Below, in pieces: positions 39,570-64,000 of a stretch of DNA of 64,000 bases. A program made the position numbers and the translations under genes. This DNA is from Selaginella moellendorffii (lineage: Eukaryota; Plantae; Lycopodiophyta). The number at the start of each line of letters is the position of its first letter. The first letter of the stretch is position 1. The DNA lies in NCBI RefSeq assembly GCF_000143415.4, contig NW_003314331.1:560164-624163 (forward strand), given 5' to 3'. The notes under the pieces were generated by a model. The model made no database searches, was not told the DNA's origin, and saw only the letters and a program-made list of their open reading frames with translations.

Positions 39570-40160
39570 CAACCCCTGAACCAATGGGAGGTTGCCAATT
39601 GCCGGTGAGAGAAGAAGGTGTTGTACATGTAATGTGTTGACCAAATTCTAGGGCATTGACACAACCTTTTGCATTCTGCCATAAAGTCAGTGGAGGTTTG
39701 CTGTGTCACTTGAGAGTGCTGAACCTTCTTCTCTAGGGTTCCAAAATGCCCGATCACAGATGCTAGATTTGCATCTCTTTGATTTTCTTGCTAGATTGCT
39801 TCTAGAGTGCCGTGATTCTTAGCTCCCCAATCTCTTTATTGCTACCAACATGCTCTCACAGGATTCTAGGGCATTCTCTAGTGGCATCAGGTGAAGTCAA
39901 GTGCCAAAATTAATGCACTGATATCTATTCTTGAGCAAATCAATGATATCAAGTTGATTAAGTTGGTAGTGTCTCCCGGTTCCCCACTATGCTCAAGCTC
40001 ATTGAGAGGCCACTCCAAAAGGCTGGTTTCAAGGTTGAGATTGGCATGAGCAGCAACACTCACTAATTGTTTTTCTCAGCCTCAAGGTTACTGGAGTGTG
40101 ATGGCATCCACAATGTTTTCATGATAGATCCTTGGTGGAATTTGTAGCCATGGTTTGAGT
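39570..40160 (+). pseudogene. SNF2/RAD5-HLTF-like helicase C-terminal fragment
   Basis: Across frames: SAKINALISILE; SRFPTMLKLIERPLQKAGFK; FLSLK; NVFMIDPWWN. Confidence 0.55.
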
Positions 40161-42249
40161 TCATGCTTGAGGTAAATTCCAAAGTTTAAAGTTTAAGAAA
40201 TGGTTATATAATTTGACTTCTAATCCTAAGCTCCAAACAAAGTGATAGGTTTAAAGTTCTTAAGAAATAAATTGGCTTTCTTTGTATGCAATCCTAAGCT
40301 CCAAACAAAGTGATAGCAAGATGTTCTTATGTTGATTGTCAAATTGCCCATACCAAATGAAGAATATCTTTAATCAGATGCTTAATTTAGGACCTCTTTA
40401 TAATGGCTACGGCATTTAGCAACTCTAATTTAGGGCTTGAAGACCAGTGATCAATCATTGTTAGACAATTTCTCTTCACAGCAACAAATTGAGCAAGTTC
40501 TAAATGATGTAGAGGTAGTGGTTCAAGTGAAAGTCTTAGTGCTTGATAAAATGGAATGCAATTAATTTCCTTTCCAAGAACTATATACCCTACACAGTTT
40601 AGTACTTCATGTATTCCAATTTAGGTTTTGCAAGCCTCTTGGCTGCTTTAGTAGATACTAGAATCCCATTGACTGGATTTCCTTTGTCTTTTAACTGTAT
40701 TTGTGCAGACATAGCAAATCTTATGGCATTTTATGAGGTAATCAATGCTTTATATATGTGTTTATAATGGGATTTTATAGTGATATAGACTTTGGCTTCC
40801 AGAATCTAAGAGTTTCCTCTAAGGAAATACAAGCTATTCTAACTTAGTTTTCAATGTAATAAAACTATAACAATAAAAAATAGTGTTTACTAACTAGGTG
40901 TAAAACATAAATCCTTAAGTCTTGAAATCAAGCCAAAGGCGTATTACATGGCAATGGCTAAAGTAAACGTTCAACAAATGTAACAGATTTGGATTAAAGT
41001 TTCAACTTGTGTCACTCCTCGCAATGACACATTAATGAAGTGGAGAATCATTGCCACCTAGCCTCGTCATTAGCCTCGTTGGTGACCTCTATTAGAACTT
41101 CTACCAACATCCTAACCCAAGGTTGCCTACAGGTTGGATAACTCACATAGATTCGTTGATCTTGAGGAATCTTCACTATGATGTGCTCCTCAAATGCTTG
41201 TAGTCGCCGCTGCAATACTAACCTCCACTTCACATGCTCTAAGGTTGTTACATGAGGCATCCTTCCAAGAAACTTTTTTTTTATTCCACTCCTTTCACTC
41301 TTATATACATGCTATACCTGGAAAATGGTCATTTGCCCTCTCGTCAACCTCTGGCACCAAGGGACACACCCCCTTTCCAACTGAATATTCCCTTATTCCC
41401 CCACTATAACCAAAAAAGAAGGAAAAACTCCTAACTTCAACCAAATCTTATTCTTAAGTTAGCTCTAGCCTTGACAACTTGAAAAATAGCAAGTAGGAGA
41501 GGAACTTCTAAATAAGCACTTGAGGAAAGAGCATAAAATGATCAATAAAAGTCTTTAGAAAGGAATAAAAAAATGATTAACACGTGGCAAGTGTTATGAG
41601 ATGAGGAAGTGTCAAGACTCAGATTAAAACCAAATCTAAGATCAAGTTTGAAACTGAGTTCTATATATCAAAGGGTAAAAGCCCAAAGTGATTGTCTCCT
41701 AAACCTTGGAGGGTTTGGTAAGTCTTTATAGGATAATAGGTAGAGGACTTCAAAAGAATTAATATGACTAAGGAAAGTTATACCCATATGGTGGTATAAA
41801 TAATCAAAGAGAATGATTTGAGAAATGATCCATAAAAGTTCAAATAGGGGCCTATGAATAATAATGCACTCCCTTTTCCAATTAGTTAAGGGTCTTGGGA
41901 TATTTGGGGTACATAAGTTTCTATATGTAAGTCCAAGATATAATATTTTATTTTTTAATAAAAAATTAATTCTTGTATTACAAAAATAAAGGTAAATTAT
42001 ATTTAAGAGGTTTTGTGCCAATAGTCTAAATACTTTAAATTCATATACTTTATTTTGAAGTAGTTTATATTTATGGCCAATATTTGGTGTGGATCTAAGT
42101 GAATATATAAATACTTATGGTCCAGATTGAAATTAATCTAACAAGTACCAAAATCCCAATATGTTAATATTAGTATTTGGCATTGTAGCCATACACTTGG
42201 ACCTCACATCATCTCCTCCTCTAGGAATGATGAAAGACCATCAAGATTT

Positions 42250-44330
42250 TTTTATAGATGGGCCAGGATTTTGAGGAACATCACAACGAGGCATTGATGA
42301 ATTTGTAGGTAGTGGTAGAGTATTATGAGCTTGGCACAAATATAACCACAAACATACCAGAAAACATCACATTGTATCTTCGGCCAATAAAAAGATTTAT
42401 ACAACTTCTCTATCACATGACAATGTCTTATATACCCATATAAAATAGGAGAATCATAGTAAGCATGGAGGAAGCATAGAATAAAAATTGAAAGCACCAC
42501 TAATCATAAATGATCATTAGGATTTGTCCTCACAAAATAAAGAAGATTATTTTTAAGCCGATATTAAGAATGTAAATGCCAAAATGACAAGTCATTAATA
42601 AGTAATATAGGATTCTTAAATCTATTGCAAAGCCTTTAAATCCATGGCTCAATCTTTTAAGCTTCGCAAACTTCATCAAGAGAAGGTAAATTTTGTTGTA
42701 CACTTTATGGATACTGACATCAAGTGCAACAACTGCCGATGACATAGAATCCTCATCAAAAAAATCCATAGATGCTGGAATAACAAATTCATAAAAAACA
42801 TAAGAAGAAAGTGAAGAAGGAAGAAGAGTTTGAAAAAGGGCATTAGCATCAGCCATAAAACTCCTTGAGTAATAAACAACATTAAAATTATATATTTGAA
42901 GCTTCAAAGCCCATTGAGCAGTACGACAAACTAAATTCTTCTATTTCAATAATGAAGTAACTACAACATAATCACCTTTTAGTAATGTTCGAGAACTATA
43001 TAGATATGTATGAAGTTTCTCAAAACCCCAAACTATTGCTAAACACTCCTTTTTTATCATGGAGAATTTCACCTCCATAAGTTTTAATGTACAACTGATA
43101 TATGTAATAGGATGGCACACTTAAGCTCTCTTACATTAACACACCTCCAAGACTGATATTAAAAGTATCCATATGTAAAATAAAAAGTTGAGTATAGTTA
43201 GGATACACCAAAATTGAAGGAGTCGTCAAAAGCTCTTTGAGATTCGTAAACACCGCTCACAGTTTGCAAACCAGATGAAGGATGATGTTGATGACTTCAG
43301 TAACACTCACAACGGTGTAGTGTGATCAGAAAGATGATCAACAAAACGATTAAGATACTGCACTTTCTCTATAAAACACTGCACATCATTTACACACTTT
43401 AGAGTAGGGAATTTTAGAATAGCCACAAGTTTGTCAAAATCAACTTGCAAACCCTCACAAGAAATACGGTACCCAAGATAACTTGTGTCTTTGGACCTAA
43501 ACACGCACTTAGACTACTTCAGCTTTAAACCCACTTCCCGTATCCGATCCAACACGTTATGAACATCATGAACGTGTTCTTCCCACGTCCCTCAAAGTAG
43601 ATTAAAACATTATTGATGAAGTCAGTAGTCATTTATAGCATATTGCAAAGAACCTCCTCCATTATGCGATGGAAAGTTACTAAGGTATTGTTCAAACCAA
43701 ATAGCATTACCAAGAACTCATATAAACAAAATAGTGTACACAAAATAGTTTTAGAAATATCTTCTTTGGCTATTGATACTTGCCAATATCTAACAACTTC
43801 TCCCTAGACAATCTAAAATATCAATAGTGTGAGGAAGAGGGTACACATCTGGGATTGTCATTTTATTTAATGGACGATAGTCGATGCAAAAACAAATATT
43901 CTCATTAAAATTTATCACAAAATAAAGTTCATATGCCCAAGGACTCCATGACTTTCAAATAACACCCTTTTCCAATATCTCTTTGATGTTTGCATATAAA
44001 ATTTTGATATCTTTGGGTGACTGACGACAAACTAGAATCTTGATTAGACAAGCATCCCCAGTTGATGAAAATATAAGAGGAAGTAATAAAGAGACAAAAG
44101 TGATGAAAACAAGGTAGAAGTAGAGGGATAAAGAAGTATAGAAGTGAAAGGAATGGAAGAAATATAAAGAAGTATAAGATCAGGAGGAGAAGCCTTAAAG
44201 TCACATTTGGCATGATTGTGCTATAACCATTCCATATCAAGGATGAGGTTAAAAGTTTGACTTAGCACTATTGCCTAAGTTTAAAGACAAGGATGAAAAC
44301 ATAGTCGTGGCCATGATATCCATTGTTGGA
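42250..44330 (-). mobile_element. Degenerate Ty3/Gypsy pol remnant (RT, RNase H, integrase zinc finger)
   Basis: FCIDYRPLNKMTIPDVYPLP; MLFGL; YLGYRISCEGLQVD; WALKLQIYNF...ADANA; LYKSFYWPKIQCDVFWYV. RT-RH-IN order. Heavily mutated; boundaries approximate. Confidence 0.8.
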
Positions 44331-44585
44331 CATATGATGAAGTTAGTCATATTTATCAGTGTTGTTAGCATTTTCCAGATTGGTGACCTCCATTTTCTTA
44401 AGTGGAGAACTTGGCATCAATAACGTCTTGTTGGTGCTACTGTAGTGGAAGATCTGAACAATGAGATGCATCTAGGAAAAGAGGAGTCACACGAATAATG
44501 GAAAGACCTTGCGTGAATAAGTCAATGACCCTTTTATCTTTCTTTTTAGAGTATTATTAAGGGTTCATTCGGCACTAGTTCTTTG

Positions 44586-44666
44586 CATACATATACATAC
44601 ATACATACATACATACATACACATACACATATATACATATATACATACATATACATACATACATAT

Positions 44667-44699
<33 letters not shown>

Positions 44700-44764
44700 T
44701 ATATATACATATATATACACATATATATACATATATATACACATATATATACATATATATATAC

Positions 44765-44845
<81 letters not shown>

Positions 44846-44883
44846 CATATATACATATACATACATATATACATATATACATG

Positions 44884-44934
<51 letters not shown>

Positions 44935-45070
44935 ATATGTATATATGTATGTATATATGTATATATGTATATATGTATACTTGTTTATATATATATACAT
45001 AAACCCTAAACCCTAAACCCTTACAAACCATATATATAAGGTTTGTAAATATATGTATGTATATATATGT
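44586..45070. repeat. Compound (CATA)/(TA)/(TATG) microsatellite with about 3 telomeric CCCTAAA units at 45000-45021
   Basis: Directly visible. Confidence 0.95.
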
Positions 45071-46423
45071 ATCACACTGACTAAGTAATACATTAATTTT
45101 AGTACTATACCATATGGACCATTCATTTGGGACTAAATTTAGTTCATCCATTTTTGTATATAACCAAAAGTTTAAACTCCAATTAATATATTTATTCTTA
45201 TATCCACATTAGTAGAGTTGAGGGGCATTGTAATTTGTCCCTGAAAGGCAAAGTTTTTTGGTAGTGCTTTGCTCTAGTGTTCAACCCCCCAGCACCAAAA
45301 GTTTGATCCAATAGAGCAACATTAACCACCTCAAATGACATACTTTTTGATTGATGATAGCATGGCATGGTAGAAGAAGAGAATGTGATGAAGATTAGAA
45401 GAAAGAGTAGATTTAAGCACAACAATAGCTAAAATTCTAGATTTTGTAAAAAATTAATATAAATCTAGATCTAAAAGAGAATGAAGGAATAAGAACAAAA
45501 AGCTTAATCTTTGATCATGTTGGTTGTGTGCTTATCCTTGATGTATTACTGTCTCCAACTTTTGTGGGATGTGATTACACAGCTTGTTTTGTTCTTGGTG
45601 TTTTGCTATCTCTTGTTGATGTGGAGCATGATTATGATATCAATTGAAAAGTTATAGATGATACAATTTAGTTTTTGGAGAATGTTCAAGGATTGAGTTT
45701 ATGGGAAGATAATGTGTATGAGGTTAAATGGATTCCAGATTGTTTTGACAAGCTTGATTATTATAGAAATAGTTGTGGAGATGAAATGAAGATTTTACAG
45801 GGTAAGTGTCAAACCTTTAATCTAATCCTTTCTCTTTACCTTTTGCTTTCTCCTAACCTTCTTATTTCTCAATTTGACCTTCTCATGTTTTTAATATTTT
45901 TTCCTCATTTGCAGTGTTTTCTTCTTCTGACATGTCAATCATTTGTGACTCTTATGATTCTCAATTTCAATCAAGTATTGAGTTAAGTGTTTTATGTCCT
46001 CTTCATACTAATCTGGATGTTGTGTATGTGCATGAATTTGAGAATTTTACTTTTGTTTCATTAGCAAAGTCTTTAATCAATTTTGGTGTTGAGTATTCCC
46101 CTATTCCAAAAGTTAAATCACTTTAGCCAGAGTTTCAATTTGAGTGCATGTCCTTAATTATAAGTGTTATTAAGAGCCTTTGTTTTACCATTGTTATTGA
46201 GGAGTTTATATATTCCCTTAAAAGTATAAATGTTATTATTAATTTTCCCATCTCAAGTGTTGAGTTGTGTGTTAAGAAGGTTGAGTAGTGTGAATCTTTT
46301 ACTTATATTGTGGTGGCCAAAGTATTTTTCCAAGCTTTAAGAACATATCTTTTTTTTATTTTCTTATTTATGCATTGCCAATTACTGTAAATTCCTCTTT
46401 TGATGCTTCTTTATCCACTTTTT

Positions 46424-46596
46424 ATGTATGTATATGTATGTATATGTATGTATATGTATATGTATGTATATGTATATGTATGTATATGTATATATGTATG
46501 TATATATATATGTATATGTATATATATGTATGTATATATGTATGTATATATATATGTATATATATATATATGTATGTATATATATATATATGTATG

Positions 46597-46656
<60 letters not shown>

Positions 46657-46683
46657 TGTATGTATATATATATATATATATAT
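46424..46683. repeat. Compound (TATG)/(TA) microsatellite
   Basis: Directly visible. Confidence 0.95.
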
Positions 46684-48016
46684 GCATTGAAAAAAATTTA
46701 TATTGAAAAGATGATTTTGTGAATCACACAACAATTCAAGCACATGTTTGTTTTAATTTCATATATCTTGCAAGCTTATACATTTTTTTTATTAGGCCAC
46801 CCACTCTAGATATGCCTCCTCTTGGGAGGTGTACCTCCCCCAAAACTTGCAATCACAAATTGTTTGTTATATATTATACATGTAAATGATAGATTAATTA
46901 TATAAATCTTATACAATCTAGTTAGACATATTTATTGTATAATTATTTATGTTATTGTGTAGCATATTCACAAAGGAAAATTACTTGGTCCTTAGGTTTG
47001 AATAATACTAGGCTAGGTGACCTCCTAGGAAGTCCAAATCGAGGATCTTACATTTGGTATTAAAGGAGTTTCGAGTTTGATTCTATTGGTTGGCAAAGGG
47101 AATTATACCATATGTTAAAATTTACATTTTTCAAGTTCAGTTTGCTTTGGCTAGGCTCAACCTAAGGGGTAGGGTGTCCCAAGAGCCCTGCTCTCTCTTT
47201 CGTTCACGAGGGCATAAACTTTGGTTTTCACTCTTTATTGTATGGTGATTTACTATAGGATAACCACAAAGTAGAATTTAAACCTTTCATATGCCATATG
47301 TTATATACCATATGCCACATGCCATATATTTAAAGGACAGTAGAGTGAAACATAAGTTTCATGGCCTTAGGCCACTGAATGAAAGAATAGAGCTAAACTC
47401 CTAAACATGGAGCTAAAGAGCGACGAAATTAGAGCATAGAGCAACTCCTAAGCATACAGCCCAAGGAGTGAAGGGACAAAGGCATGAAGTGACTTAAAAT
47501 AATCCTAGAGTATTTAGCATTTCAGTGCTAGGACTAACACATAAAATAGGAGCGAAATGGAGTGTAGCACTATTTGAACATATTAATGGCCTAACATGAC
47601 AATATAGATACTCCATTAACTAGCATGGTGTGGAACATAGGCTTAAGCCCAAACCAAACACAGAACAAAAATAAACATGCAAATAGGAACTATATTATGT
47701 TTTAGGTTGGTCAGCCATACCCATGAATAGGATTGATTTGTAACAGTAAAAGATTAATTATTAGGAAAATGTATTTAAAACCATATATATTTGCAAAATA
47801 TATTGTAAATTCAAATATATAAAAATCTATATATAGGTTCATAACAGGACAAAAAATTATTAAACTACATTTATAGCATGACCCAATTTAAAAAAACATT
47901 TCCAAAACCATAAAAGTGGCATATAGATTTTTCTTAGTGACAGCCACATAGTTTTGCAACTAGTGATCCATATTGACAAGCTAGCTGTGTTCTACAACCT
48001 CAGCGAGAAGCTCTCC

Positions 48017-49830
48017 TCATGTCTCATGCTGGCAAACGCCTCCACAGCCTTGGCCTCGTCTCTTGCCTCGATGTACCCCATAACACCATGCTGTGGAAAG
48101 GCAAACAAACGTGCATGTATGTGTTGCACTTGACTTTGTGGCCTGTGAGTGAACGGTCTTGCCTTTGTCCAGAGTAAAAACTTTCACGAGCTTCCCGTCA
48201 ACCTGTCTCGCTTCTTCCTTAGCAGCCAGGCCGATGGCAGCTTTGGCCACCACAACGAAAGTTAGCATGTCTGGCTCANNNNNNNNNNNNNNNNNNNNNN
48301 NNNNNNNNNNNNNNNNNNNNNNNNNNNNNNNNNNNNNNNNNNNNNNNNNNNNNNNNNNNNNNNNNNNNNNNNNNNNNNNNNNNNNNNNNNNNNNNNNNNN
48401 NNNNNNNNNNNNNNNNNNNNNNNNNNNNNNNNNNNNNNNNNNNNNNNNNNNNNNNNNNNNNNNNNNNNNNNNNNNNNNNNNNNNNNNNNNNNNNNNNNNN
48501 NNNNNNNNNNNNNNNNNNNNNNNNNNNNNNNNNNNNNNNNNNNNNNNNNNNNNNNNNNNNNNNNNNNNNNNNNNNNNNNNNNNNNNNNNNNNNNNNNNNN
48601 NNNNNNNNNNNNNNNNNNNNNNNNNNNNNNNNNNNNNNNNNNNNNNNNNNNNNNNNNNNNNNNNNNNNNNNNNNNNNNNNNNNNNNNNNNNNNNNNNNNN
48701 NNNNNNNNNNNNNNNNNNNNNNNNNNNNNNNNNNNNNNNNNNNNNNNNNNNNNNNNNNNNNNNNNNNNNNNNNNNNNNNNNNNNNNNNNNNNNNNNNNNN
48801 NNNNNNNNNNNNNNNNNNNNNNNNNNNNNNNNNNNNNNNNNNNNNNNNNNNNNNNNNNNNNNNNNNNNNNNNNNNNNNNNNNNNNNNNNNNNNNNNNNNN
48901 NNNNNNNNNNNNNNNNNNNNNNNNNNNNNNNNNNNNNNNNNNNNNNNNNNNNNNNNNNNNNNNNNNNNNNNNNNNNNAGCAGTCTGTCGTATGGCCTCCA
49001 GCATACAAAGCCATGGCCTTTCTCCAAACTTGCCAGCTTCACGGCCCTCCCGTCGATTTTTCTGGTGACTTCTTTTCCTGCGACGCTGGTGCAAGCCTTC
49101 AAGGTGGCAACGTACGATTGAGAGGTCGGAGCACAGCCCCTGGAAGTTTTCATGCTGTCGAAAAGCTCCAACACGGTCCCTGCCTCTCCATACTCGCAGT
49201 AGCCAAACATGAGAGCGTTCCACGCCGCGGCCTTTTGACACTCCATGCTGTCGAAGACTCTTCGAGCATCCGTCATGCTCCCACACTTGGTAGAAATCCA
49301 CCAGTGTGTTGGCGAGCACAGCCTCCGGATCATCGATACTTGAGCGTGTACTCTCGTGCCTCGCTCAAAAGCCACCACCTTGACGAGCCTCCCGTGAACC
49401 TGCCTTTGATCTTCTCTCGCTGCAAGGCTGGAGCGAGCCTTGAGCGCAGGAGCGAAAGTGTCTTCTCGCAGCTCACACGCTCAAACAGCTCGAGAGCGAC
49501 CCTCCCCCCCCCCCCCCCTTCTCCATTCCCATTCCAGAACACGACCGTGTGAAACTCCATCCTGTCGAAAGCTCCCCGATCCCCCCGAATCATTCCTTTC
49601 TCCAAAGCACTGAGCTTGACTTTTCCACTGCCGATGACGATCGTGCTCTCTTCACTGTCAGCCATGGAAGAGCACGCCTTGATTGCTCCTAGGAAAGTCC
49701 CCGCATTGGGACGCAAGCCGCGGAATAATTCCAGTGTCCAATCTCCTCTTCCATTTTCAACGTATCCCAGCAGCAGCGAGTTCCAAGTCATGACGTCATA
49801 CTGTGGAATTCTTTCGAAGATCTGACGAAT
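48017..49830 (-). pseudogene. PLS-type PPR gene remnant(s), frameshifted, spanning an assembly gap
   Basis: IFERIPQYDVMTWNSLLLGYVENG; ANTLVDFY; KCGSMTDARRVFDSM; WNALMFGY; PDMLTFV; spacer DGKLVKV...KGKTVHSQA. Confidence 0.8.
48279..48977. other. Assembly gap (699 N)
   Basis: Run of n. Confidence 1.
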
Positions 49831-50211
49831 CAAAATCCTTGCTGCTGATGGATTCCAGATACCCGGCCATGATCGCCATCCACACTGCGGCAAGCATGGT
49901 GTGCGCATCCGTGACGCTGCAGCATCGCGGTTTGTTCTCAAAAATGTTCTAATGATAATCCCAGCCCTTTGAAGTAGCACAAATACTGCCCAGCCAATAT
50001 AAATTGCCTGGAACATACCATGGCATAACATAACAGCCCCATGAAGAGATTGGTGAATCATTCGATCTAAGCCATGGAGATGGGGCAGCCTCTTGCGTTG
50101 CAACATGAGAATTCTAACAAAGGGCGAAGTAGAGCTATCAATTCTCTGCTTTGAAAGGTATAATCCATTTCAAATTATTAAAATCAAACCTTCTCTAATA
50201 CAAAATATTTA

Positions 50212-51745
50212 TTACTGAGTGCTTGCATTTGTTAGCCTTGGAGTTACACGAACTTGCAGTGGTGACTCTGGCCAAGTTACTGCTCCAAAAGTCTCATCAA
50301 AACCATAGCTTTTCCCGGGAACATGATGCCAATCAAAGCCGTGGAGCAAATTTCCAAGAGTGAGATAGACAGTTTTGAGACCCAGTGCCATGCCTGGGCA
50401 TATTCTTCTCCCAGCTCCAAATGGAATCAGCTCAAAGTCTTGGCCTTTCACATCGATTGCCGACCCCAGAAACCTCTCGGGCCAAAACTTTGTAGGATTC
50501 TCCCAAACTTTCGGATTTCTGCCAATGGAGTAAACGTTGACAATAGTGGTGGCACCTTTGGGAACGTGGAATGATTGACCCAATACACAAGCTCGAGTTG
50601 ACATCCTCGGCACCAGCAATGGCGCTGGAGGGTGCATCCTGAAAGTTTCCTTGACAATGGCCTCAAGATATGTCAGCTTTGGGAAATCAGACTCTGAAAC
50701 CATGCGATCTCCACCCACGACAGCATCGAGCTCTTCTTGTGCTTTCCTGATGATCTCTGGATTGTTGAGAAGTTCTAGCAAAGCCCACTCTACTGTGCAT
50801 GGGCTTGTGTCTGTTCCTCCTGCAAGGATTTCCTGTGGCAAAACATTTCCAGAGTATGAATTATTAATGTTAGAGTGATTCTCCGCTTACCATTAAGGTG
50901 GCTCTGACAACTTCATGGTCGCCTCCTCTATGCTCAAGCAAGATATCCATGAAATCCATTGTGGGACGGGATTTGTTGACTTTGTGTTCGTCGATGATCT
51001 TCTGGAGGAATTCATTCTGCTTGGCAGCTACTCGTTTAGCCTGTGGTATGTTCCAGTCGATCCATTTGAGCCAAGATGGTACAAACTCACTTATATGGAA
51101 CTGGAGAGAAAACTTGACTGACTCATCGATCAGTTCCTTGAACACTTTGGCTTCTTCTAGCTCGTCGCCACTCAGGTTCTTGCCTAAAAACCTCTTACTC
51201 ATAAGGACCCGTGTCTGTACGTTGAATGCAAAAACAGTGAGGTGTTCTCGCAGATCTACAACACTTCGGTCTTTGCAAGCTTGGGCAAGTGATGACATCA
51301 AGTAAGAAAGCTCCTCCAGTCTAACCCACAAGAAAGAATCAATGCGTTTGACTGTGAAGAGCTCGGCGGTGCAGATCTTTCTCATGCTCTTCCAGTGATC
51401 GCCACTAGCTAAAGCCATTCCCTTGAAATTGTTGCCACTGTGCTCTCCAACCAACAAGTATGGCCTGAAACTAAAAGTTGAGTCTTCAGTCTTGAGCACT
51501 TGTTTTGCTAGAGCTGGACTGGAGATCACAATTGCTGGGATCATCCCCAATTTGAGATACATAATCTCTCCAAAATTCCTGGACAGCTTTTGCAATGAAT
51601 GGTGAGGCATTCTTCCAATGAGATGGAGGTGACCAATGAGTGGCAAGCCCCATGGAGATGGGGGCAGCCTGTTGCTTGGCAACAACACATTCTTGAAGAG
51701 ATGGAGCAAGAGTAGAAATCCAAAGAAGTAGAGAAGGAACTCCAT
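50212..51745 (-). CDS. Cytochrome P450, CYP71 clan (A-type), 2 exons (51745-50891, 50832-50212)
   Basis: Membrane anchor; LPPSPWGLPLIGHL; I-helix AGGTDTS; KETFR; WPERF; heme motif PFGAGRRICPG; single phase-0 intron. Confidence 0.93.
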
Positions 51746-53543
51746 CTAGTTTGCCTGAATAATGATCATAGACTATAATCATGGTCTATAAATAATGATC
51801 TCATTGTGATGCAATTTGTAAACACAGGTTAGGTTGAAGTATGCTTTTTCTATGGCTAGGCATATTCTTTATCCTGCCAACCATTCCATGGATCGAATGA
51901 CCGGTATAATCTCTTTGTTTCTTAAGCAAACTTGTAGGGGGAGTGTAGGAATTTAAGTATGGCAATCAATATGTGATTACACATGGGAGAAGTATATATT
52001 TACATATGTGTGAATATATATTTGTTTTCAATTACACACAATAATATTATGCACACAATTATAATAGCAATTGAAATGTGATTGTGATATGCCATGTGCC
52101 TGGGGGCATGCCATATGCACAAACATTTCATGCCACATCTACATTTGAGTATCAATTGAATTCCACAATCCATAGAGCTTGGCATGTACAATATTGCATT
52201 GAAAAATATTTTGAGTAATTACTGAGTGACTTTTCTATGGTTTTCTTGGCTTGTCAAGATTTTGAGACATAAACTAATCACATCATGGAGTGAGCACGGG
52301 AGGTTAGGCATTAGGATGGAGCTATGTCAAGAGATTGTTGCTCAAATCCAGCTATTATAGTGTCGCTAGGAAGAAGATTGATGGAGGGATATGGTTGGAG
52401 AGGCTGTTTCACTAAGAACAAACTCTTAATAGGTGGTGATTCTGCATAAAGTATGATTGCTGATCAAGACTTAAATAGAAATTTGTGAAGAGGCAACTTG
52501 CTAAACTACCACCAAATAGTGTATAAAAATCAATTCTCCCCATAATCTTGCTTATTTCTTAATGCTAGATGACAATGAATGGATGAGTTGGGGCTTGAAG
52601 AATTTATATATGGTGCATGGTGTTGATGTATCATGCTTGAAAAACATAGCACTGAAAAAAAGAATTTAAGCATATATATTTTTAATTGATATATCTTAAA
52701 GTATAATACAATTTTTTGCCACACCACCCACTCTAGGTCTCTAGAGATGTCCTAAAACCATTATTAACTCAATTAAATCTATACTACCTACTATATTTAT
52801 TCCAATATAAATCCTAGACTTTTTAAAATAGTTAAATGGATATCTGATACTATAAAATAATGATAGAACCAACCATAACTCTTCAAGCAGTTATTTAGTT
52901 TCTTAAACTATCCAATCCATGAGTGGTCATCCTATGACCACTCTTAGCATATTTAGAAGATTGTAAGCAATTAAATTGTTCATTCTTCTTTAGTCACTTA
53001 AAAATGTTTATGACCACTTAAAAAAGTTTCATTCACAACCTCTATAAATTTTTATCCTAGCTTGTTAGAAGAGTTTCACTCACAACCTCTATAAGTCTTT
53101 ATCTCAATTTATGACCACATTTTGAAACACTTGTAGTAACTTTATAAGTAGTCTCTTACCACTAGGGTGCCTTAACCACGTGGTTAGAGTAAAATTCTAA
53201 TGAGCCACTCAAGGTATTTAAGTAAGTAATCTCACCTATACTTAAATTAAAAGCATCAACCATTTTATCTCTTAAAGGAGTTAAAAGTTAACATTCACCA
53301 AGTCATTATATCTATATTCATTTTAGTTTTGGACTTTTTATTATTTGTTTTACTTTCACAAGAAATCCCAAGTTATATTATCACCCATTTGTAAGCTCTT
53401 GAGTTTGGATTTCCCAAAAAGTCATCTAACCTAATATATTTTCTAATAAATATTATATTCCACATTTTTTTAATATGGGTCTTAGCAATACATTGAAATA
53501 AGATAAAAATTACTCCTACTACTTTATTAAAACACATCACTTT

Positions 53544-54392
53544 TCAATGCTTAGCTTCGTTTTTCAATTCTTTAATCCATGCTTCTTCTGTAGCTGCATA
53601 TGGGTCATACCCTGGAGGCATTTCTTCGACGGATCTGTATAACTCGAAGCCTAGGCTTGCTTGGTATAAAAGTTCATCCAGTCGCTGAAAATATTCCCAG
53701 AGAAGGGGACGAAAGATTCCCAAGTCTGGATGTTTTGTGCAAATCCGTTTGAGGTTTTCACATTCAATCCGTTGGACGCAGAAATGAGGATGGTATTGCA
53801 GGAAGTCTGCTACCTGAACGATACAACCCACCTGAAAACATACACAAATCAACATGTAAGATAGAAGGTGATACAAACCTGAAGACGAAGTCTCTTCATT
53901 GATCCAGTGTAAGTCCTCTCTGCCCAGTTCTCATTTCACAGAGGATCTCTTGAACAGTGATACGTGTCGTGTCCCTTCGCTAGGCAGAGGTAGCATTTCT
54001 TTTGTTCATGAGCAAAAGGATCCACTCCAGGCTAAAAGAAGAAACCAAAAGTCAAATCTGGAAAACAAGTGACCCCCTTGCAGTGTCTTTCCCAATGGCC
54101 TCTCTTCTTACAATTTCTGCATTGGTCGACGAGTAATCCCTCCTTCTCACCCGGACGATGAGTTCCTATGATCTCGTACCTGTTACAAACAAAAGCTAGT
54201 AAAGATCGAACTCAATCTTGCTTACCTTGCTCGCATGCGTTCGGCAGGGTTCTCCTTCGGCTTTTCCTTTGTGAACACATTGTGCTGCCCGTTGCTGCTG
54301 CCGCCATAGGCCTTCTTGTGCTCCCCGTTGCTACTGCTGCCGTCGTAAGCCTTCCTGTAGTGCCCGTTGCTGCTGCTGGTGTACGCCTTCAT
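53544..54392 (-). pseudogene. Two-CCHC zinc-knuckle gene, copy 4 (most complete; CGA>TGA stop)
   Basis: Three KAY..SSNG.H units, CRNCKKRGHWERHC, CYLCLAKGHDTYHC, then GAT CCT CTG TGA where the other copies have CGA. Intron 2 is shortened to 42 bp. Confidence 0.8.
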
Positions 54393-60078: not shown

Positions 60079-61792
60079 ATGGCTCGCTGGCTGCGCAGGC
60101 TCAATCCACTCATGTCCGTCGCGCAGTCCGAGGCGGCCTCTCCGATCCCGATCTCTCCGGCGCTGGCGGCGTTCCGAGAGCGATTGGCAAGCGATGCGCC
60201 GGAGCTTAAGGATTTCGTGAGCGAGGGCTCGGGTGTGGAAGGCTACTCGGTGGCGGTGGGGACGCGGGAGGATCCGCGGCGCAAGCCGGATTGGATGAAG
60301 CGGATCATTCCAGGTGGGGAGAAGTACACGAGGATCAAATCGCAGCTGAGGGAGCTCAAATTGAATACCGTGTGTGAGGAGGCCAAATGCCCCAATATTG
60401 GAGAGTGCTGGAGCGGTGGCGACACGGGCACGGCCACTGCGACGATCATGATCCTGGGGGATACGTGCACCAGAGGCTGCCGGTAAGCTTTCTTCTTTCT
60501 TGCTAGTTTGTTCTTGGATGCATTGCTGGTTTGCTGGACAGTATTGGTTTTTCTTCTTGGTACTCTAGATCTTTTCTTTCTCAACATACTAGATCATTGC
60601 TCCATTTTTTTAGATCTTTTCTTTCTCAGCATACTCGATCATTGCTCCATTGTTTCTTTCTTTGTACTCTTTCTCGACATACTAGATCTGGTTTTGTCTT
60701 GGTACTCTCTTCTCCATTGTTTCTTTCTTGGTACTCTTTCTCAACACATTGTTTTTTTTCTTGGTAGTTTGCTTGCTCTAACTAGATAACGTTGAGTTCT
60801 TCACCACTGCTAGCTTTCTCTTGCGATTCCATGCTGGTTTGCTTTCTGTTTATTTTGCGTGAAGTTTCATTGTTAGTTTTTTCCATTCCTTTGTGAAGCT
60901 ACTTGTACACTTTTTTTCTTTCTCGTGTTAACATTTTTCTCGTTCCTGACGTGCAGATTTTGTGCAGTGAAGACATCGCGAGCTCCACCTCCACCTGATG
61001 CAGACGAGCCAGCCAAAGTTGCTGAAGCGATTGCCTCTTGGGACCTCGAGTATGTGGTGCTCACGAGCGTGGACCGGGATGATTTACCCGATCAAGGAAG
61101 CGGGCACTTCGCCGAGACAGTGAGGAGGATCAAGCAACGCAAGCCGGGCATGCTGGTTGAGGCCTTAGGTGAGCTTATGCCAGCATCTGGAGGAACTAAC
61201 GTCGTCTTCTGTCGCAGTTCCCGACTTTCGAGGCGATCCCGACTGCGTGGAGAAAGTGGCCACCTCTGGACTGGACGTCTTTGCGCACAACATAGAAACC
61301 GTGCAAGAGCTACAGAGCTCGGTCCGAGACAGGCGAGCAAACTTCCAGCAATCCATCAACGTCTTGAAGATGGCCAAGCTGACAGGTCCTCGCGGGGTTC
61401 TCACCAAGACCTCGATCATGCTGGGCTGTGGCGAGACATCTTCACAGGTTTTGGAGACCATGGCCAGAGTGAGAGACGCCGGCGTGGACGTGATGACTTT
61501 CGGGCAGTACATGCGACCGACGAAGAAACACATGCCAGTGTCCGAGTACGTGACTCCGGAAGCGTTCGAGAACTATCGAAGAATCGGAATGGAAATGGTA
61601 CGTTTTCGAAGTTTCGAAGTGTTTTTGTTTTTTTTTTTCCAGCTGAAGCGTGAAAATCTCTTTTTCCTTTGTTTCTTACAGGGATTTCGATATGTGGCTT
61701 CAGGCCCAATGGTGAGATCCTCCTACAAAGCTGGAGAGTTTTACATCAAAGCGATGCTCGACGCAGATAGAGAGGCAGCGATGGTTTCATAG
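60079..61792 (+). CDS. LIP1: Lipoyl synthase, mitochondrial type (radical SAM), 4 exons
   Basis: [13 protein letters not shown]; CTRGC-RFC; TSVDRDDL; AHNIETV; TKTSIMLG; [12 protein letters not shown]. Exons approx. 60079-60482, 60958-61168, 61219-61597, 61682-61792. Confidence 0.96.
60550..60790 (+). repeat. Degenerate ~41-bp minisatellite in LIP1 intron 1
   Basis: TAGATCTTTTCTTTCTCA.CATACT.GATCATTGCTCCATT is repeated, with partial TTGGTACTCT units. Confidence 0.7.
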
Positions 61793-62036
61793 AAAAATAT
61801 TAAAGGTATGATTCTTTCGCGCGGAGATTGATTCCGATTTAAGAAGAGCCGTCGGATTCTCCACGTCACCGATTCCCGCGGCGGAGGATCGTGCGGCCTA
61901 GCGGCGCCCCTCCAGATCCGCCGCTTGGCCTCTTCCTCTTCGAGTGTGACTCTTGGCCACTTTGGCCAAAGAGTCGAGCTCTTGAAGAAGAGGAGGAGGA
62001 AGAACTTGGGCGATCGAACAAACGAAGTAGAAGATC

Positions 62037-62483
62037 ATGGCTCGACGGAGGAAGAGCCGGAGCCGGAGCCGGGGTGGCAAGAAAGTCCGCGTGCCAAAGA
62101 TGAAACTCGCGGTGCGCGATGCTCTGGCGTCGCTCAAAGCCAAGAGAGGTGTCACAGCTGCGGCGGTGGCCCGGAAGATCAAGAAGAAGTATGGAAACGA
62201 TCTCCCCAAGCGCTTCCAGGCCCAGGTGGGGCGATCGCTGCGCGGGCTGGTCCGAGCGGGGCGGCTGGAGCGTGTGCGCGGCCGCTTTGCGGTGGCCACT
62301 GGCAAGAGTGGACGAGGCGGGCGACGTAAAAGAGGTGGACGGTCGAGATCGAGATCGACGTCGCGGAAGGGCGGGCGGCGCCGCCGCCGTCGCCGCCGCC
62401 GCCGCCGGGGTGGACGGCGATCGCGATCGCGGTCGCGGTCGAGGAAGGGCGGGCGGCGCCGCCGGCGTCGCAGACGCCACTAG
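62037..62483 (+). CDS. Arginine-rich linker-histone-derived protamine-like protein (H15 winged helix + RS/poly-R tails)
   Basis: H1 globular-domain pattern PKMKLAVRDALASLKAKRGVTAAAVARKIKKKY...LPKRFQAQVGRSLRGLVRAGRLERVRGRF. Flanked by ARRRKSRSRSR and GGRRSRSRSRSRKGG-polyR. About one third Arg. Intronless. Confidence 0.85.
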   Translation: MARRRKSRSRSRGGKKVRVPKMKLAVRDALASLKAKRGVTAAAVARKIKKKYGNDLPKRFQAQVGRSLRGLVRAGRLERVRGRFAVATGKSGRGGRRKRGGRSRSRSTSRKGGRRRRRRRRRRRGGRRSRSRSRSRKGGRRRRRRRRH

Positions 62484-62724
62484 AAAATGGTGCGGGCGCA
62501 TATTCCTTTGACTCGTTGGTTATTTTTGTGGTTCTTTTACGTGTTTGTGGAGGTTTTTGGTGCAGGAATCAGAGACGCATTCGATGATGAGATCCATGAC
62601 ACGAACATCCTTTAATTTTTTCGAAAATGCCACTACTGTGTTCTTTTGACGAATAAAATTTTGAGATTAGATCCGACCTCGAGCTTCTTCCTAATTTCTT
62701 CTTTAACTCCTCCGACTTTTTTTT

Positions 62725-63165: not shown

Positions 63166-64000
63166 TCACAAGCACGGAAAGACTTGAAATTGTAACCCAT
63201 CATCTGGTAAGAAGCTGCAAGGATGATCCCTCTGCGACTAAGGCGTCTGCTGTGGTTAAATTGGAGTTTCGAACGTCCAAGGAGAGTACTGGTAGTCTGG
63301 GCGCCCACTCCCCGGCCTCCACACCAGATCCGATCTGGCTCATTTGGTTCGTATGAATACTGGACGGCGTGCTTGAACGACGTCTCTGGGTACATTCTGG
63401 AAAACTTTTCATGGTGAGGCTTATTGCATTGATTCAAGAATTGTTTTAATAACTGGGAAGGAAATTTTGACCTCGTTAAAGTGGATTGTAGAATTATAAA
63501 TTTTTATTAGAGATTATTATCTAAAATAAAATGTACTTTTTATAATAGTAAGATAGAATTGGCTGAAGTAAGAACAGTATAAAAAATAGTTGTGTTTATA
63601 CAGAATTTATAATAACTGCAAGCAAGGTGCTTTAAGTTTTTATGGAAGTAAAATTGCATTTTATGGTATATTTGGTAGTAAATACAAAAATATTTTTCTG
63701 TTATATAGTTTTTTGGGGGTTTAAATATAAATGTAATATAATAAGAATACAGTCAATTTAACCTATTAAAACTCAGTATATAGTATTTAGAAATATTACT
63801 TGATAGGCTGATATAACATTTGAAGTTTTGCTTAATTTTCAAACATTTCAGAGTGATTTTTTCTAAATGTAATGTTCTATTTATTCTTTTATAATTATAT
63901 ATAAATATATTCTTAAACAGCTCAGTTCTATGCAAGTTGATGAGATCCCTTAAAATATTAACCATCCAATTAATAGGAAGCTAGAACTTCTTACATCTTA

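What the first reader, a model, noticed from the sequence alone, without database searches (positions are those of the whole stretch)
62037..62483. H1-to-protamine intermediate: Arg-rich winged-helix protein with a duplicated protamine-like tail
Seen: a 148-aa protein with an H1 globular domain carrying many Arg at basic positions, an N-terminal SR tract, and a tail of two near-tandem units (GGR[R]SRSRS[T/R]SRKGG followed by R11 or R8). The tail has no PKKA-type somatic H1 repeats. Established knowledge: protamine-like sperm nuclear basic proteins derive from H1, and liverwort sperm protamines arise by cleavage of such H1 variants. Inference: a sperm-chromatin protein of a plant with flagellated sperm, possibly cleaved to release a ~60-aa protamine.
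Basis: partly seen in the sequence, partly recalled or inferred. Interest (0 to 1): 0.75.

Follow-up and report, generated by a model that had tools for sequence, protein, structure and literature searches.

The report
Spikemoss H1 gene with protamine-like tail
The spikemoss Selaginella moellendorffii has a small intact gene that joins a linker-histone (H1) DNA-binding fold to a very arginine-rich, protamine-like tail that public gene models splice away; it is a credible but unproven candidate for a sperm-chromatin packaging protein in a vascular plant.

Summary
Window 62037-62483 (+) is a 148-codon ORF. Residues 20-92 match Pfam Linker_histone above its curated cut-off and model as a winged helix whose best PDB matches are H1/H5 globular domains. 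The rest is an N-terminal R/S tract and a 56-residue tail that is 59% Arg, made of two 75-nt units.

The window is Selaginella moellendorffii scaffold GL377635.1, a plant with flagellated sperm. The public model SELMODRAFT_424901 (112 aa) removes the whole tail as a 240-nt intron. Composition argues that the tail is coding: GC drops from 0.77 to 0.43 exactly at the long ORF's stop, and all six Arg codons are used. The second haplotype keeps the frame with a 15-nt in-frame deletion. None of this is proof.

The globular domain is very divergent. An exhaustive search of 1.84 billion proteins found its nearest non-self relative to be another Selaginella H1-like protein with an R/S-rich tail. No ortholog was seen outside the species.

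I found no RNA or protein evidence, so the sperm role and the proposed cleavage stay inference by analogy with Marchantia. This scan had already noted the other haplotype's allele and reached the same reading. Verdict: new member of a known kind (H1-derived protamine-like proteins), moderately interesting.

The parts
62037..62483 (+). Full uninterrupted ORF (148 aa plus stop): H1-fold protein with a protamine-like tail
62037..62093 (+). N-terminal basic R/S tract, aa 1-19 (7 R, 3 K, 3 S)
62094..62312 (+). Globular winged-helix domain (GH1), aa 20-92
   Evidence: Pfam PF00538 35.4 bits. AF2 model is helix-helix-helix plus beta-hairpin, pLDDT 71. Foldseek top hits are all H1/H5 globular domains.
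62313..62333 (+). Junction RGGRRKR (aa 93-99). The annotated splice donor (GT at 62326) lies here. It is also a conceivable processing site.
   Evidence: the processing site is inference only
62334..62408 (+). Tail unit 1: GGRSRSRSTSRKGG + R11. The (CGC)n run at about 62379-62407 is 15 nt shorter in the other haplotype.
62409..62483 (+). Tail unit 2: GGRRSRSRSRSRKGG + R8 + H + stop
62326..62565 (+). The 240-nt GT..AG 'intron' of public model SELMODRAFT_424901. Its first 158 nt are the Arg tail (GC 0.77) and its last 82 nt are UTR-like (GC 0.43).
62566..62615 (+). Annotated second exon (…IRDAFDDEIHDTNIL). GC is 0.42, like the downstream non-coding DNA. It carries one non-synonymous haplotype difference at 62602.
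62652..62657 (+). AATAAA, a candidate polyadenylation signal about 170 nt after the long ORF's stop
   Evidence: read

Best explanation
This is a real, single-exon Selaginella moellendorffii gene. Its product is a 148-aa (143 aa in the other haplotype) linker-histone derivative.

Proposed mechanism: the divergent, Arg-shifted H1 winged-helix domain docks on nucleosomal or linker DNA. The 56-residue tail carries Arg blocks of 8-11 separated by Gly and RS repeats. It neutralises DNA phosphates and drives extreme chromatin condensation, as protamine-like (PL) sperm nuclear basic proteins do. The RS dipeptides would be phosphorylation switches for deposition and removal. The tail may be cleaved off near RGGRRKR as a free protamine, as reported for Marchantia.

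Shown here: the ORF, the H1 fold, the tail composition and duplication, its conservation in both haplotypes, and the host organism. Inferred: that the tail is translated rather than spliced out, expression in spermatids, DNA condensation, phosphorylation and cleavage.
For: H1 fold:
- Pfam match above cut-off.
- A profile built with this domain hits H1.0/H5 in PDB at 5e-11.
- The AF2 model and Foldseek top hits (5nl0_Z, 7xvl, 7k5y, 7xvm) are all linker histones, TM 0.7-0.8.

Tail is coding:
- GC is 0.67 (exon 1), 0.77 (tail), then 0.43 directly after the long ORF's stop. The annotated exon 2 (0.42) is indistinguishable from downstream non-coding DNA (0.41), and a true neighbouring intron is 0.34.
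- All six Arg codons are used in the tail. Amino-acid entropy is 1.75 bits in this frame against 2.40 and 3.38 in the others.
- The two units differ mainly by synonymous Arg codon changes, dN/dS 0.27, P about 0.07.
- The N-terminus, which is coding in every model, carries the same RSRSRS-GG motif.
- The haplotype allele keeps the frame with a 15-nt deletion.
- The nearest paralog, XP_024539071.1, is a single-exon RefSeq model with an R/S-rich tail.

Sperm reading:
- The host has flagellated sperm.
- Marchantia protamines derive from male-germline H1s, as cited in PMC10858212 and PMC12849711.
- Language-model look-alikes are mollusc H15 proteins (0.91) and an arthropod 'protamine-like' cluster (0.88).
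- The globular domain sits on a very long branch.
- No RefSeq model and no assembled transcript was found for the locus. That fits expression confined to a rarely sampled cell type.
Against: - No RNA or protein evidence of any kind was obtained.
- The public models of both haplotypes splice the tail out, using a usable donor (GTAAAA) and a good acceptor (TGCAG|G).
- The region is open in nearly all frames because of its GC content, so ORF length proves nothing.
- The unit-versus-unit dN/dS test is not significant, and frame +1 scores similarly at 0.36.
- The 15-nt indel lies in a (CGC)n microsatellite that would slip in multiples of 3 anyway.
- No ortholog was found in any other species, so there is no comparative support.
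- One canonical GH5 DNA-contact position (the R94 equivalent) is Ala, by manual reading across.
- Absence of transcripts fits an unexpressed ORF equally well.
Confidence: 0.45

Rival explanations
1. The public 112-aa spliced model is the true or main product: a short, tail-less H1-like protein. On this reading the Arg-rich stretch is intronic GC-rich microsatellite-like DNA.
For: GT..AG boundaries with a good acceptor and a 240-nt length. Both haplotypes are annotated this way. The (CGC)n run is length-polymorphic like a microsatellite. The dN/dS test is not significant.
Against: The first 158 nt of the 'intron' have GC 0.77, higher than the exon, while a real intron next door has 0.34. The annotated exon 2 has UTR-like composition, no relatives, and a non-synonymous haplotype difference. 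The tail repeats a motif found in the undisputed N-terminus. The JGI model of the paralog was also truncated to the conserved domain (P0003, 70 aa), whereas RefSeq gives a 238-aa single exon with an R/S tail. That suggests the JGI models here systematically lose low-complexity tails.
Confidence: 0.2
2. The 148-aa protein is made but does not work in sperm. It would be an Arg-rich H1 variant for another compaction or nucleolar task, for example chromatin in dormant or desiccated spores, meiosis or stress.
For: Nothing ties the gene to the male germline. Poly-Arg and RS tracts also occur in nucleolar and RNA-associated proteins (own knowledge). No DUO1-type MYB site (AACCGYC) lies near the gene, although that test has low power.
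Against: The combination of an H1 fold with Arg blocks of 8-11 split by G/S is the signature of PL proteins and protamines. The nearest feature-space clusters are animal sperm-type H1s. A highly expressed somatic gene would probably have a RefSeq model and assembled transcripts.
Confidence: 0.2
3. It is a non-functional, untranscribed relic or a young orphan ORF derived from an H1 duplicate.
For: No transcripts or orthologs were found. The globular domain sits on an extremely long branch of 3.8 substitutions per site. One conserved DNA-contact residue is lost.
Against: The ORF is intact in both haplotypes, with an in-frame indel only. The Pfam score is still above cut-off, and the hydrophobic core residues and the fold are retained. 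The start context is optimal and AATAAA lies downstream.
Confidence: 0.12

Closest known systems
Marchantia polymorpha PRM: male-germline H1 histones processed into sperm protamines (D'Ippolito et al. 2019, J Biol Chem 294:16364; paper not held, known here through citations in PMC10858212, PMC12849711 and PMC13251019)
   Same: A land plant with flagellated sperm. One polypeptide carries both an H1 globular domain and an Arg-rich region. The tail has a protamine-like size and Arg content.
   Different: No sequence relationship beyond the generic H1 fold was detectable. No Marchantia protein was among the five hits at E<=1e-3, and I could not fetch the PRM sequences for a direct comparison. Expression, cleavage and C-terminal modification are unknown for the Selaginella gene.
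Animal protamine-like (PL-I type) sperm nuclear basic proteins of molluscs, arthropods and tunicates
   Same: A winged-helix H1 domain with Arg-enriched tails. The closest ESM-Atlas clusters are a mollusc H15 cluster (0.91) and an arthropod 'protamine-like' cluster (0.88).
   Different: This is resemblance of features only, with no alignment-level homology beyond PF00538. The kingdom is different, so any similarity of the tails is convergent.
Selaginella moellendorffii XP_024539071.1 'histone H1-like' (P0007, 238 aa, GL377602.1)
   Same: It is the nearest relative: 37% identity over the globular domain, BLASTP 3e-13. It is single-exon, its globular domain is Arg-shifted (R/(R+K) 0.39), and its tail is R/S/K-rich with RSRS repeats.
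   Different: It is longer. Its tail is mixed K/R/S/P without long poly-Arg blocks. It has a non-basic N-terminus and sits at a different locus.
Canonical somatic plant H1 (e.g. the Lupinus and Papaver H1s retrieved)
   Same: PF00538 domain with the plant-type short wing loop, and a tripartite layout.
   Different: Somatic H1 tails are K/A/P-rich, with overall R/(R+K) of 0.05-0.19. Here it is 0.76, with no S/TPKK motifs.
True protamines (vertebrate P1 and fish types)
   Same: Arg clusters separated by G/S residues and RS phosphorylation-type sites (own knowledge), in a tail of about 56 residues.
   Different: No Pfam protamine family matched. The tail is attached to a folded H1 domain, and there is no cysteine.

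Membership tests
Linker histone H1/H5 (PF00538) | Sequence match to the globular-domain profile above the curated threshold | tested here: met
   35.4 bits against a cut-off of 22.4, aa 20-92. The hapB allele gives 35.5 bits.
Linker histone H1/H5 (PF00538) | Three-helix winged-helix fold with a beta-hairpin wing, superimposable on solved GH1/GH5 | tested here: met
   The AF2 model with a 7-sequence alignment has pLDDT 71, helices H9-20, H28-42, H47-61 and strands E64-67, E70-73. Foldseek ranks 1-11 are all H1/H5, e.g. 5nl0_Z at rmsd 1.5 A and TM 0.71/0.81. Caveat: the alignment used was made of H1s.
Linker histone H1/H5 (PF00538) | Basic DNA-contact residues of GH5 (K40, R42, K52, K69, R73, K85, R94) | tested here: inconclusive
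   Read by hand across. Five positions stay basic (K34, K36, R46, R69, R81). The K69 equivalent is Gly, and is also non-basic in the plant H1 consensus. The R94 equivalent is Ala, with Arg two residues earlier.
Canonical somatic H1 | Long Lys/Ala/Pro-rich C-terminal tail with S/TPXK motifs | tested here: not met
   The tail has 33 R, 3 K and 0 P in 56 residues.
H1-derived protamine-like SNBP / protamine precursor (Marchantia PRM type, animal PL-I) | H1 globular domain joined to an Arg-dominated tail with Arg clusters | tested here: met
H1-derived protamine-like SNBP / protamine precursor (Marchantia PRM type, animal PL-I) | Expression restricted to spermatids or the male germline | not testable with these tools
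   No exact product appears in transcript-derived assemblies. The expression-atlas supplement is truncated and the gene was not found in it.
H1-derived protamine-like SNBP / protamine precursor (Marchantia PRM type, animal PL-I) | Presence in mature sperm nuclei, with or without proteolytic release of the Arg-rich part | not testable with these tools
   Needs proteomics of sperm nuclear basic proteins.
H1-derived protamine-like SNBP / protamine precursor (Marchantia PRM type, animal PL-I) | Orthology with Marchantia PRM genes | tested here: inconclusive
   The exhaustive phmmer search gave only five hits at E<=1e-3, none of them Marchantia. The PRM sequences could not be fetched for a direct tree.
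True protamines (Pfam protamine families) | Match to a protamine profile | tested here: not met
   Only PF00538 was reported at E<=10.
Plant GH1-HMGA / GH1-Myb (TRB) proteins | AT-hooks or a Myb domain beside GH1 | tested here: not met
   No Myb or AT-hook family was found, and there is no RGRP motif in the sequence.
SR splicing proteins | RRM domain plus a long RS domain | tested here: not met
   No RRM was found. The RS runs are only 8-10 residues long.

The most novel reading that the evidence does not exclude
This gene would be the precursor of the Selaginella sperm protamine and the first sperm nuclear basic protein gene identified in a vascular plant. It would have arisen within lycophytes from a local H1 duplicate through a K-to-R shift and tail replacement, independently of the Marchantia and animal cases. 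A further twist is possible: the whole protamine module sits inside a 240-nt GT..AG 'exitron'. Splicing could then give a tail-less form in somatic cells, and intron retention could give the condensing form in spermatids.
Probability: 0.35. Interest if true: 0.72.

Novelty: new member of a known kind. Interest (0 to 1): 0.52.

Why it matters
Protamines in seedless vascular plants are known only from 1980s biochemistry (Reynolds and Wolfe 1984, as cited in PMC10858212 and PMC12849711). The only plant genes known for such proteins are the Marchantia PRMs. A recent Cycas study states that no protamine types have been identified in cycads.

A lycophyte candidate gene would make three questions directly testable:
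- whether the H1-to-protamine route was taken repeatedly in plants;
- when it was lost on the way to pollen;
- how sperm chromatin is condensed in vascular plants with swimming sperm.

There is also an annotation problem. The public Selaginella models cut Arg-rich tails out of this gene and truncate its paralog, so proteins of this kind are invisible to protein-database surveys.

Tried and rejected
1. Whole-protein word search. It was swamped by poly-Arg words and returned only the self model.
2. Word searches restricted to the globular domains of this gene and of P0007. They returned only the haplotype alleles.
3. phmmer of the whole protein against PDB. No H1 was found, only a spurious restriction-enzyme hit at E 0.63. 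A profile search was needed.
4. Single-sequence AF2. The model was poor, pLDDT 57.
5. Exact look-ups for transcripts encoding the 148-aa, the 143-aa or the antisense 211-aa product. Nothing was on record. This is uninformative rather than negative.
6. A script enumerating GT..AG introns of the upstream lipoyl synthase gene, to get local intron statistics. It gave many non-unique, clearly spurious solutions and was dropped. Only the one intron evident from the reading frames (61598-61681) was used.
7. dN/dS between the two tail units. It was suggestive only, and frame +1 scored similarly.
8. A tree of the ten available GH1 domains. It was unresolved and showed only the very long branch.
9. ESM-Atlas search with the tail alone. 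No usable hit.
10. DUO1-type motif scan. No site lies near the gene.
11. Looking for the unannotated paralog of note s1-411696 in the 20 kb around P0007, which also has an OVATE neighbour. It is not there.
12. Literature. No paper holds the gene identifiers or links Selaginella to a protamine gene. D'Ippolito 2019 is not held.
13. Rejected readings: the antisense or other-frame ORFs as genes (no Pfam), an RNA family, GH1-HMGA or TRB, and an SR protein.

Full report
**What is there.** Window 62037-62483 (+) is an uninterrupted 148-codon ORF. An in-frame TAG lies 9 nt upstream of the ATG. The start has an A at -3 and G at +4, and AATAAA lies at 62652-62657.

The protein is 34.5% Arg, 10.8% Lys, 13.5% Gly and 9.5% Ser, with only three acidic residues. 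It has three parts:
- aa 1-19: a basic R/S tract (ARRRKSRSRSRGGKK…).
- aa 20-92: a globular domain.
- aa 93-148: a tail with 33 Arg in 56 residues.

The tail consists of a short RGGRRKR junction and two 75-nt units. These are GGRSRSRSTSRKGG + R11 (62334-62408) and GGRRSRSRSRSRKGG + R8-H-stop (62409-62483).

**The fold.**
- Pfam Linker_histone (PF00538) matches aa 20-92 at 35.4 bits, above the curated cut-off of 22.4.
- The single sequence is too divergent for phmmer to reach any H1 in the PDB.
- A profile of this domain plus its few relatives hits H1.0 and H5 at about 5e-11.
- AlphaFold2 with a seven-sequence alignment gives three helices and a beta-hairpin at mean pLDDT 71.
- Foldseek ranks linker-histone globular domains in the first eleven places: 5nl0_Z at rmsd 1.5 A and TM 0.71/0.81, then 7xvl, 7k5y and 7xvm.
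- I read the register by hand across. Five of seven classical GH5 DNA-contact positions stay basic. One is Gly, as in the plant H1 consensus. One (the R94 equivalent) is Ala.
- The domain is Arg-shifted. R/(R+K) is 0.52, against 0.07-0.13 in the angiosperm H1s retrieved.

**Where it comes from.** The only close database match is SELMODRAFT_424901 of Selaginella moellendorffii, on scaffold GL377635.1. The gene lies 245 nt downstream of a lipoyl synthase gene on the same strand. The same arrangement is found on the second haplotype scaffold, GL377629.1.

**The annotation conflict.** The public model of both haplotypes (112 aa; P0001, P0002) is identical to the ORF for 97 residues. It then splices from GT at 62326 to AG at 62565, which is 240 nt. 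This removes the entire Arg tail and appends 15 unrelated residues from 62566-62615. The splice sites are usable (GAC|GTAAAA and TGCAG|GA), so this cannot be dismissed out of hand.

Evidence that the tail is coding:
- GC content is 0.67 in exon 1 and 0.77 in the tail. It falls to 0.43 immediately after the long ORF's stop. The annotated exon 2 (0.42) is like the downstream non-coding DNA (0.41). The one unambiguous intron next door (61598-61681) is about 0.34.
- The tail uses all six Arg codons (CGC 12, CGG 9, CGA 4, AGA 4, CGT 3, AGG 1). It is far more uniform at the protein level in this frame: 1.75 bits, against 2.40 and 3.38 in the other frames.
- The two units differ mostly by synonymous Arg codon switches (AGA/CGA, AGA/CGG, CGG/AGG, CGC/CGG). 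dN/dS is 0.27, but P is only about 0.07, and frame +1 gives 0.36.
- The same RSRSRS…GG motif occurs in the N-terminus, which is coding in every model.
- The nearest paralog has an R/S-rich tail in its single-exon RefSeq model, whereas its JGI model was cut down to the 70-aa conserved domain. That suggests these early models systematically lose low-complexity tails.

Evidence that is not informative:
- The region is open in almost every frame.
- The haplotype difference in the tail is a 15-nt deletion (R11 to R6) inside a (CGC)n run that would slip in threes anyway.
- The alleles are too similar for a dN/dS test. Differences are V17I at 62085, the indel, one change in the annotated exon 2 at 62602, and a 9-nt indel further downstream.

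I put about 0.75 on the tail being translated in at least one mRNA form.

**Relatives.** I ran an exhaustive phmmer search of aa 14-98 against 1.84 billion representative proteins. It found five hits at E<=1e-3:
- the gene's own model;
- a Selaginella 'histone H1-like' protein (P0003/P0007, XP_024539071.1), at 37% identity and BLASTP 3e-13;
- ordinary H1s of Lupinus and Papaver;
- an unnamed 121-aa protein.

Word searches found nothing else. No ortholog outside S. moellendorffii was seen, and no Marchantia protein appeared in the list. In a small GH1 tree the domain sits on a branch of about 3.8 substitutions per site, against a median of 0.06. The tree is otherwise unresolved. Fast evolution suits a reproductive protein, but it also suits a decaying one.

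P0007 is itself unusual, with a tail of 16.8% R, 16.0% K and 12.6% S containing RSRS repeats. I could not fetch it, and it is not within 10 kb of P0007. Selaginella may therefore have a small family of Arg-shifted H1 variants.

**Function.** Nothing I could run bears directly on expression.
- No product identical to the 148-aa, 143-aa or antisense ORF is on record in the assemblies collection.
- No RefSeq model for the locus turned up.
- The Selaginella expression-atlas supplement is held only in truncated form, and the gene was not found in it.
- No paper names the gene or a Selaginella protamine.

The sperm reading therefore rests on architecture and analogy:
- H1-derived protamine-like proteins are the accepted route to protamines.
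- Marchantia protamines are cut from male-germline H1s (D'Ippolito 2019, as cited in the papers).
- Pteridophyte sperm contain protamine-type proteins by biochemistry (Reynolds and Wolfe 1984, as cited).
- The ESM-Atlas places the protein nearest to a mollusc H15 cluster (0.91) and an arthropod 'protamine-like' cluster (0.88). This is a lead only.

The mechanism I propose has four steps. The GH1 domain docks on DNA. The Arg blocks condense the DNA by charge neutralisation. The RS sites are phosphorylated for controlled deposition and removal. The tail may be cleaved near the RGGRRKR junction. None of these steps is shown.

**Rivals.** There are three, each with its test in the structured fields:
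- The spliced tail-less protein is the real product (0.2).
- The protein is an Arg-rich H1 variant with a non-sperm role, such as spore chromatin or the nucleolus (0.2).
- It is an unexpressed relic (0.12).

Other frames, the antisense ORF and RNA families were excluded. A DUO1-type motif is absent, but that test has little power.

**Novelty and verdict.** The kind is known from Marchantia and many animals: an H1-derived protamine-like protein. A lycophyte or vascular-plant gene of this kind is not in the literature I could search, and the public models hide it. The same scan had already flagged the allele on the other haplotype (s1-398826) with the same conclusion, so this is not a fresh discovery within the scan. 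I rate it a new member of a known kind. Interest is about 0.5.

The spliced model was handled only as the database protein P0001.

Noticed in passing
L003:4001-4717 (+) = GL377602.1; protein P0007 / XP_024539071.1: A second Selaginella single-exon H1-like gene has an Arg-shifted globular domain and an R/S/K-rich tail (RSRS and SKSRSK repeats, 16.8% R). Its JGI model (P0003) is truncated to the 70-aa domain. Its haplotype allele P0010 differs at 5 of 149 residues, which looks like relaxed or diversifying selection.
   Followed up: partly
window 60079-61792 (+): A lipoyl synthase gene (LIAS_N + Radical_SAM, 368 aa, several short introns) ends only 245 nt upstream of the H1-like ATG. That leaves a very short promoter region. 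The arrangement is the same on both haplotypes.
   Followed up: partly
window 61866-62511, both strands: Because of the high GC content, ORFs of 130-211 aa are open in several frames, including a 211-aa antisense ORF. None has a Pfam match. They are compositional artefacts that could mislead gene callers.
   Followed up: yes
window 63400-64000 and about 40000-54000: There are abrupt AT-rich blocks (GC 0.29-0.35 at 40-54 kb, and a very AT-rich stretch from about 63420) next to GC-rich genes. They are possibly repeats or transposon remnants.
   Followed up: no
window 62326-62565: The annotated intron is exactly 240 nt, a multiple of three, and lies inside an otherwise continuous coding frame. 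This is the layout of an 'exitron', so alternative splicing between tail-less and tailed isoforms is conceivable.
   Followed up: no
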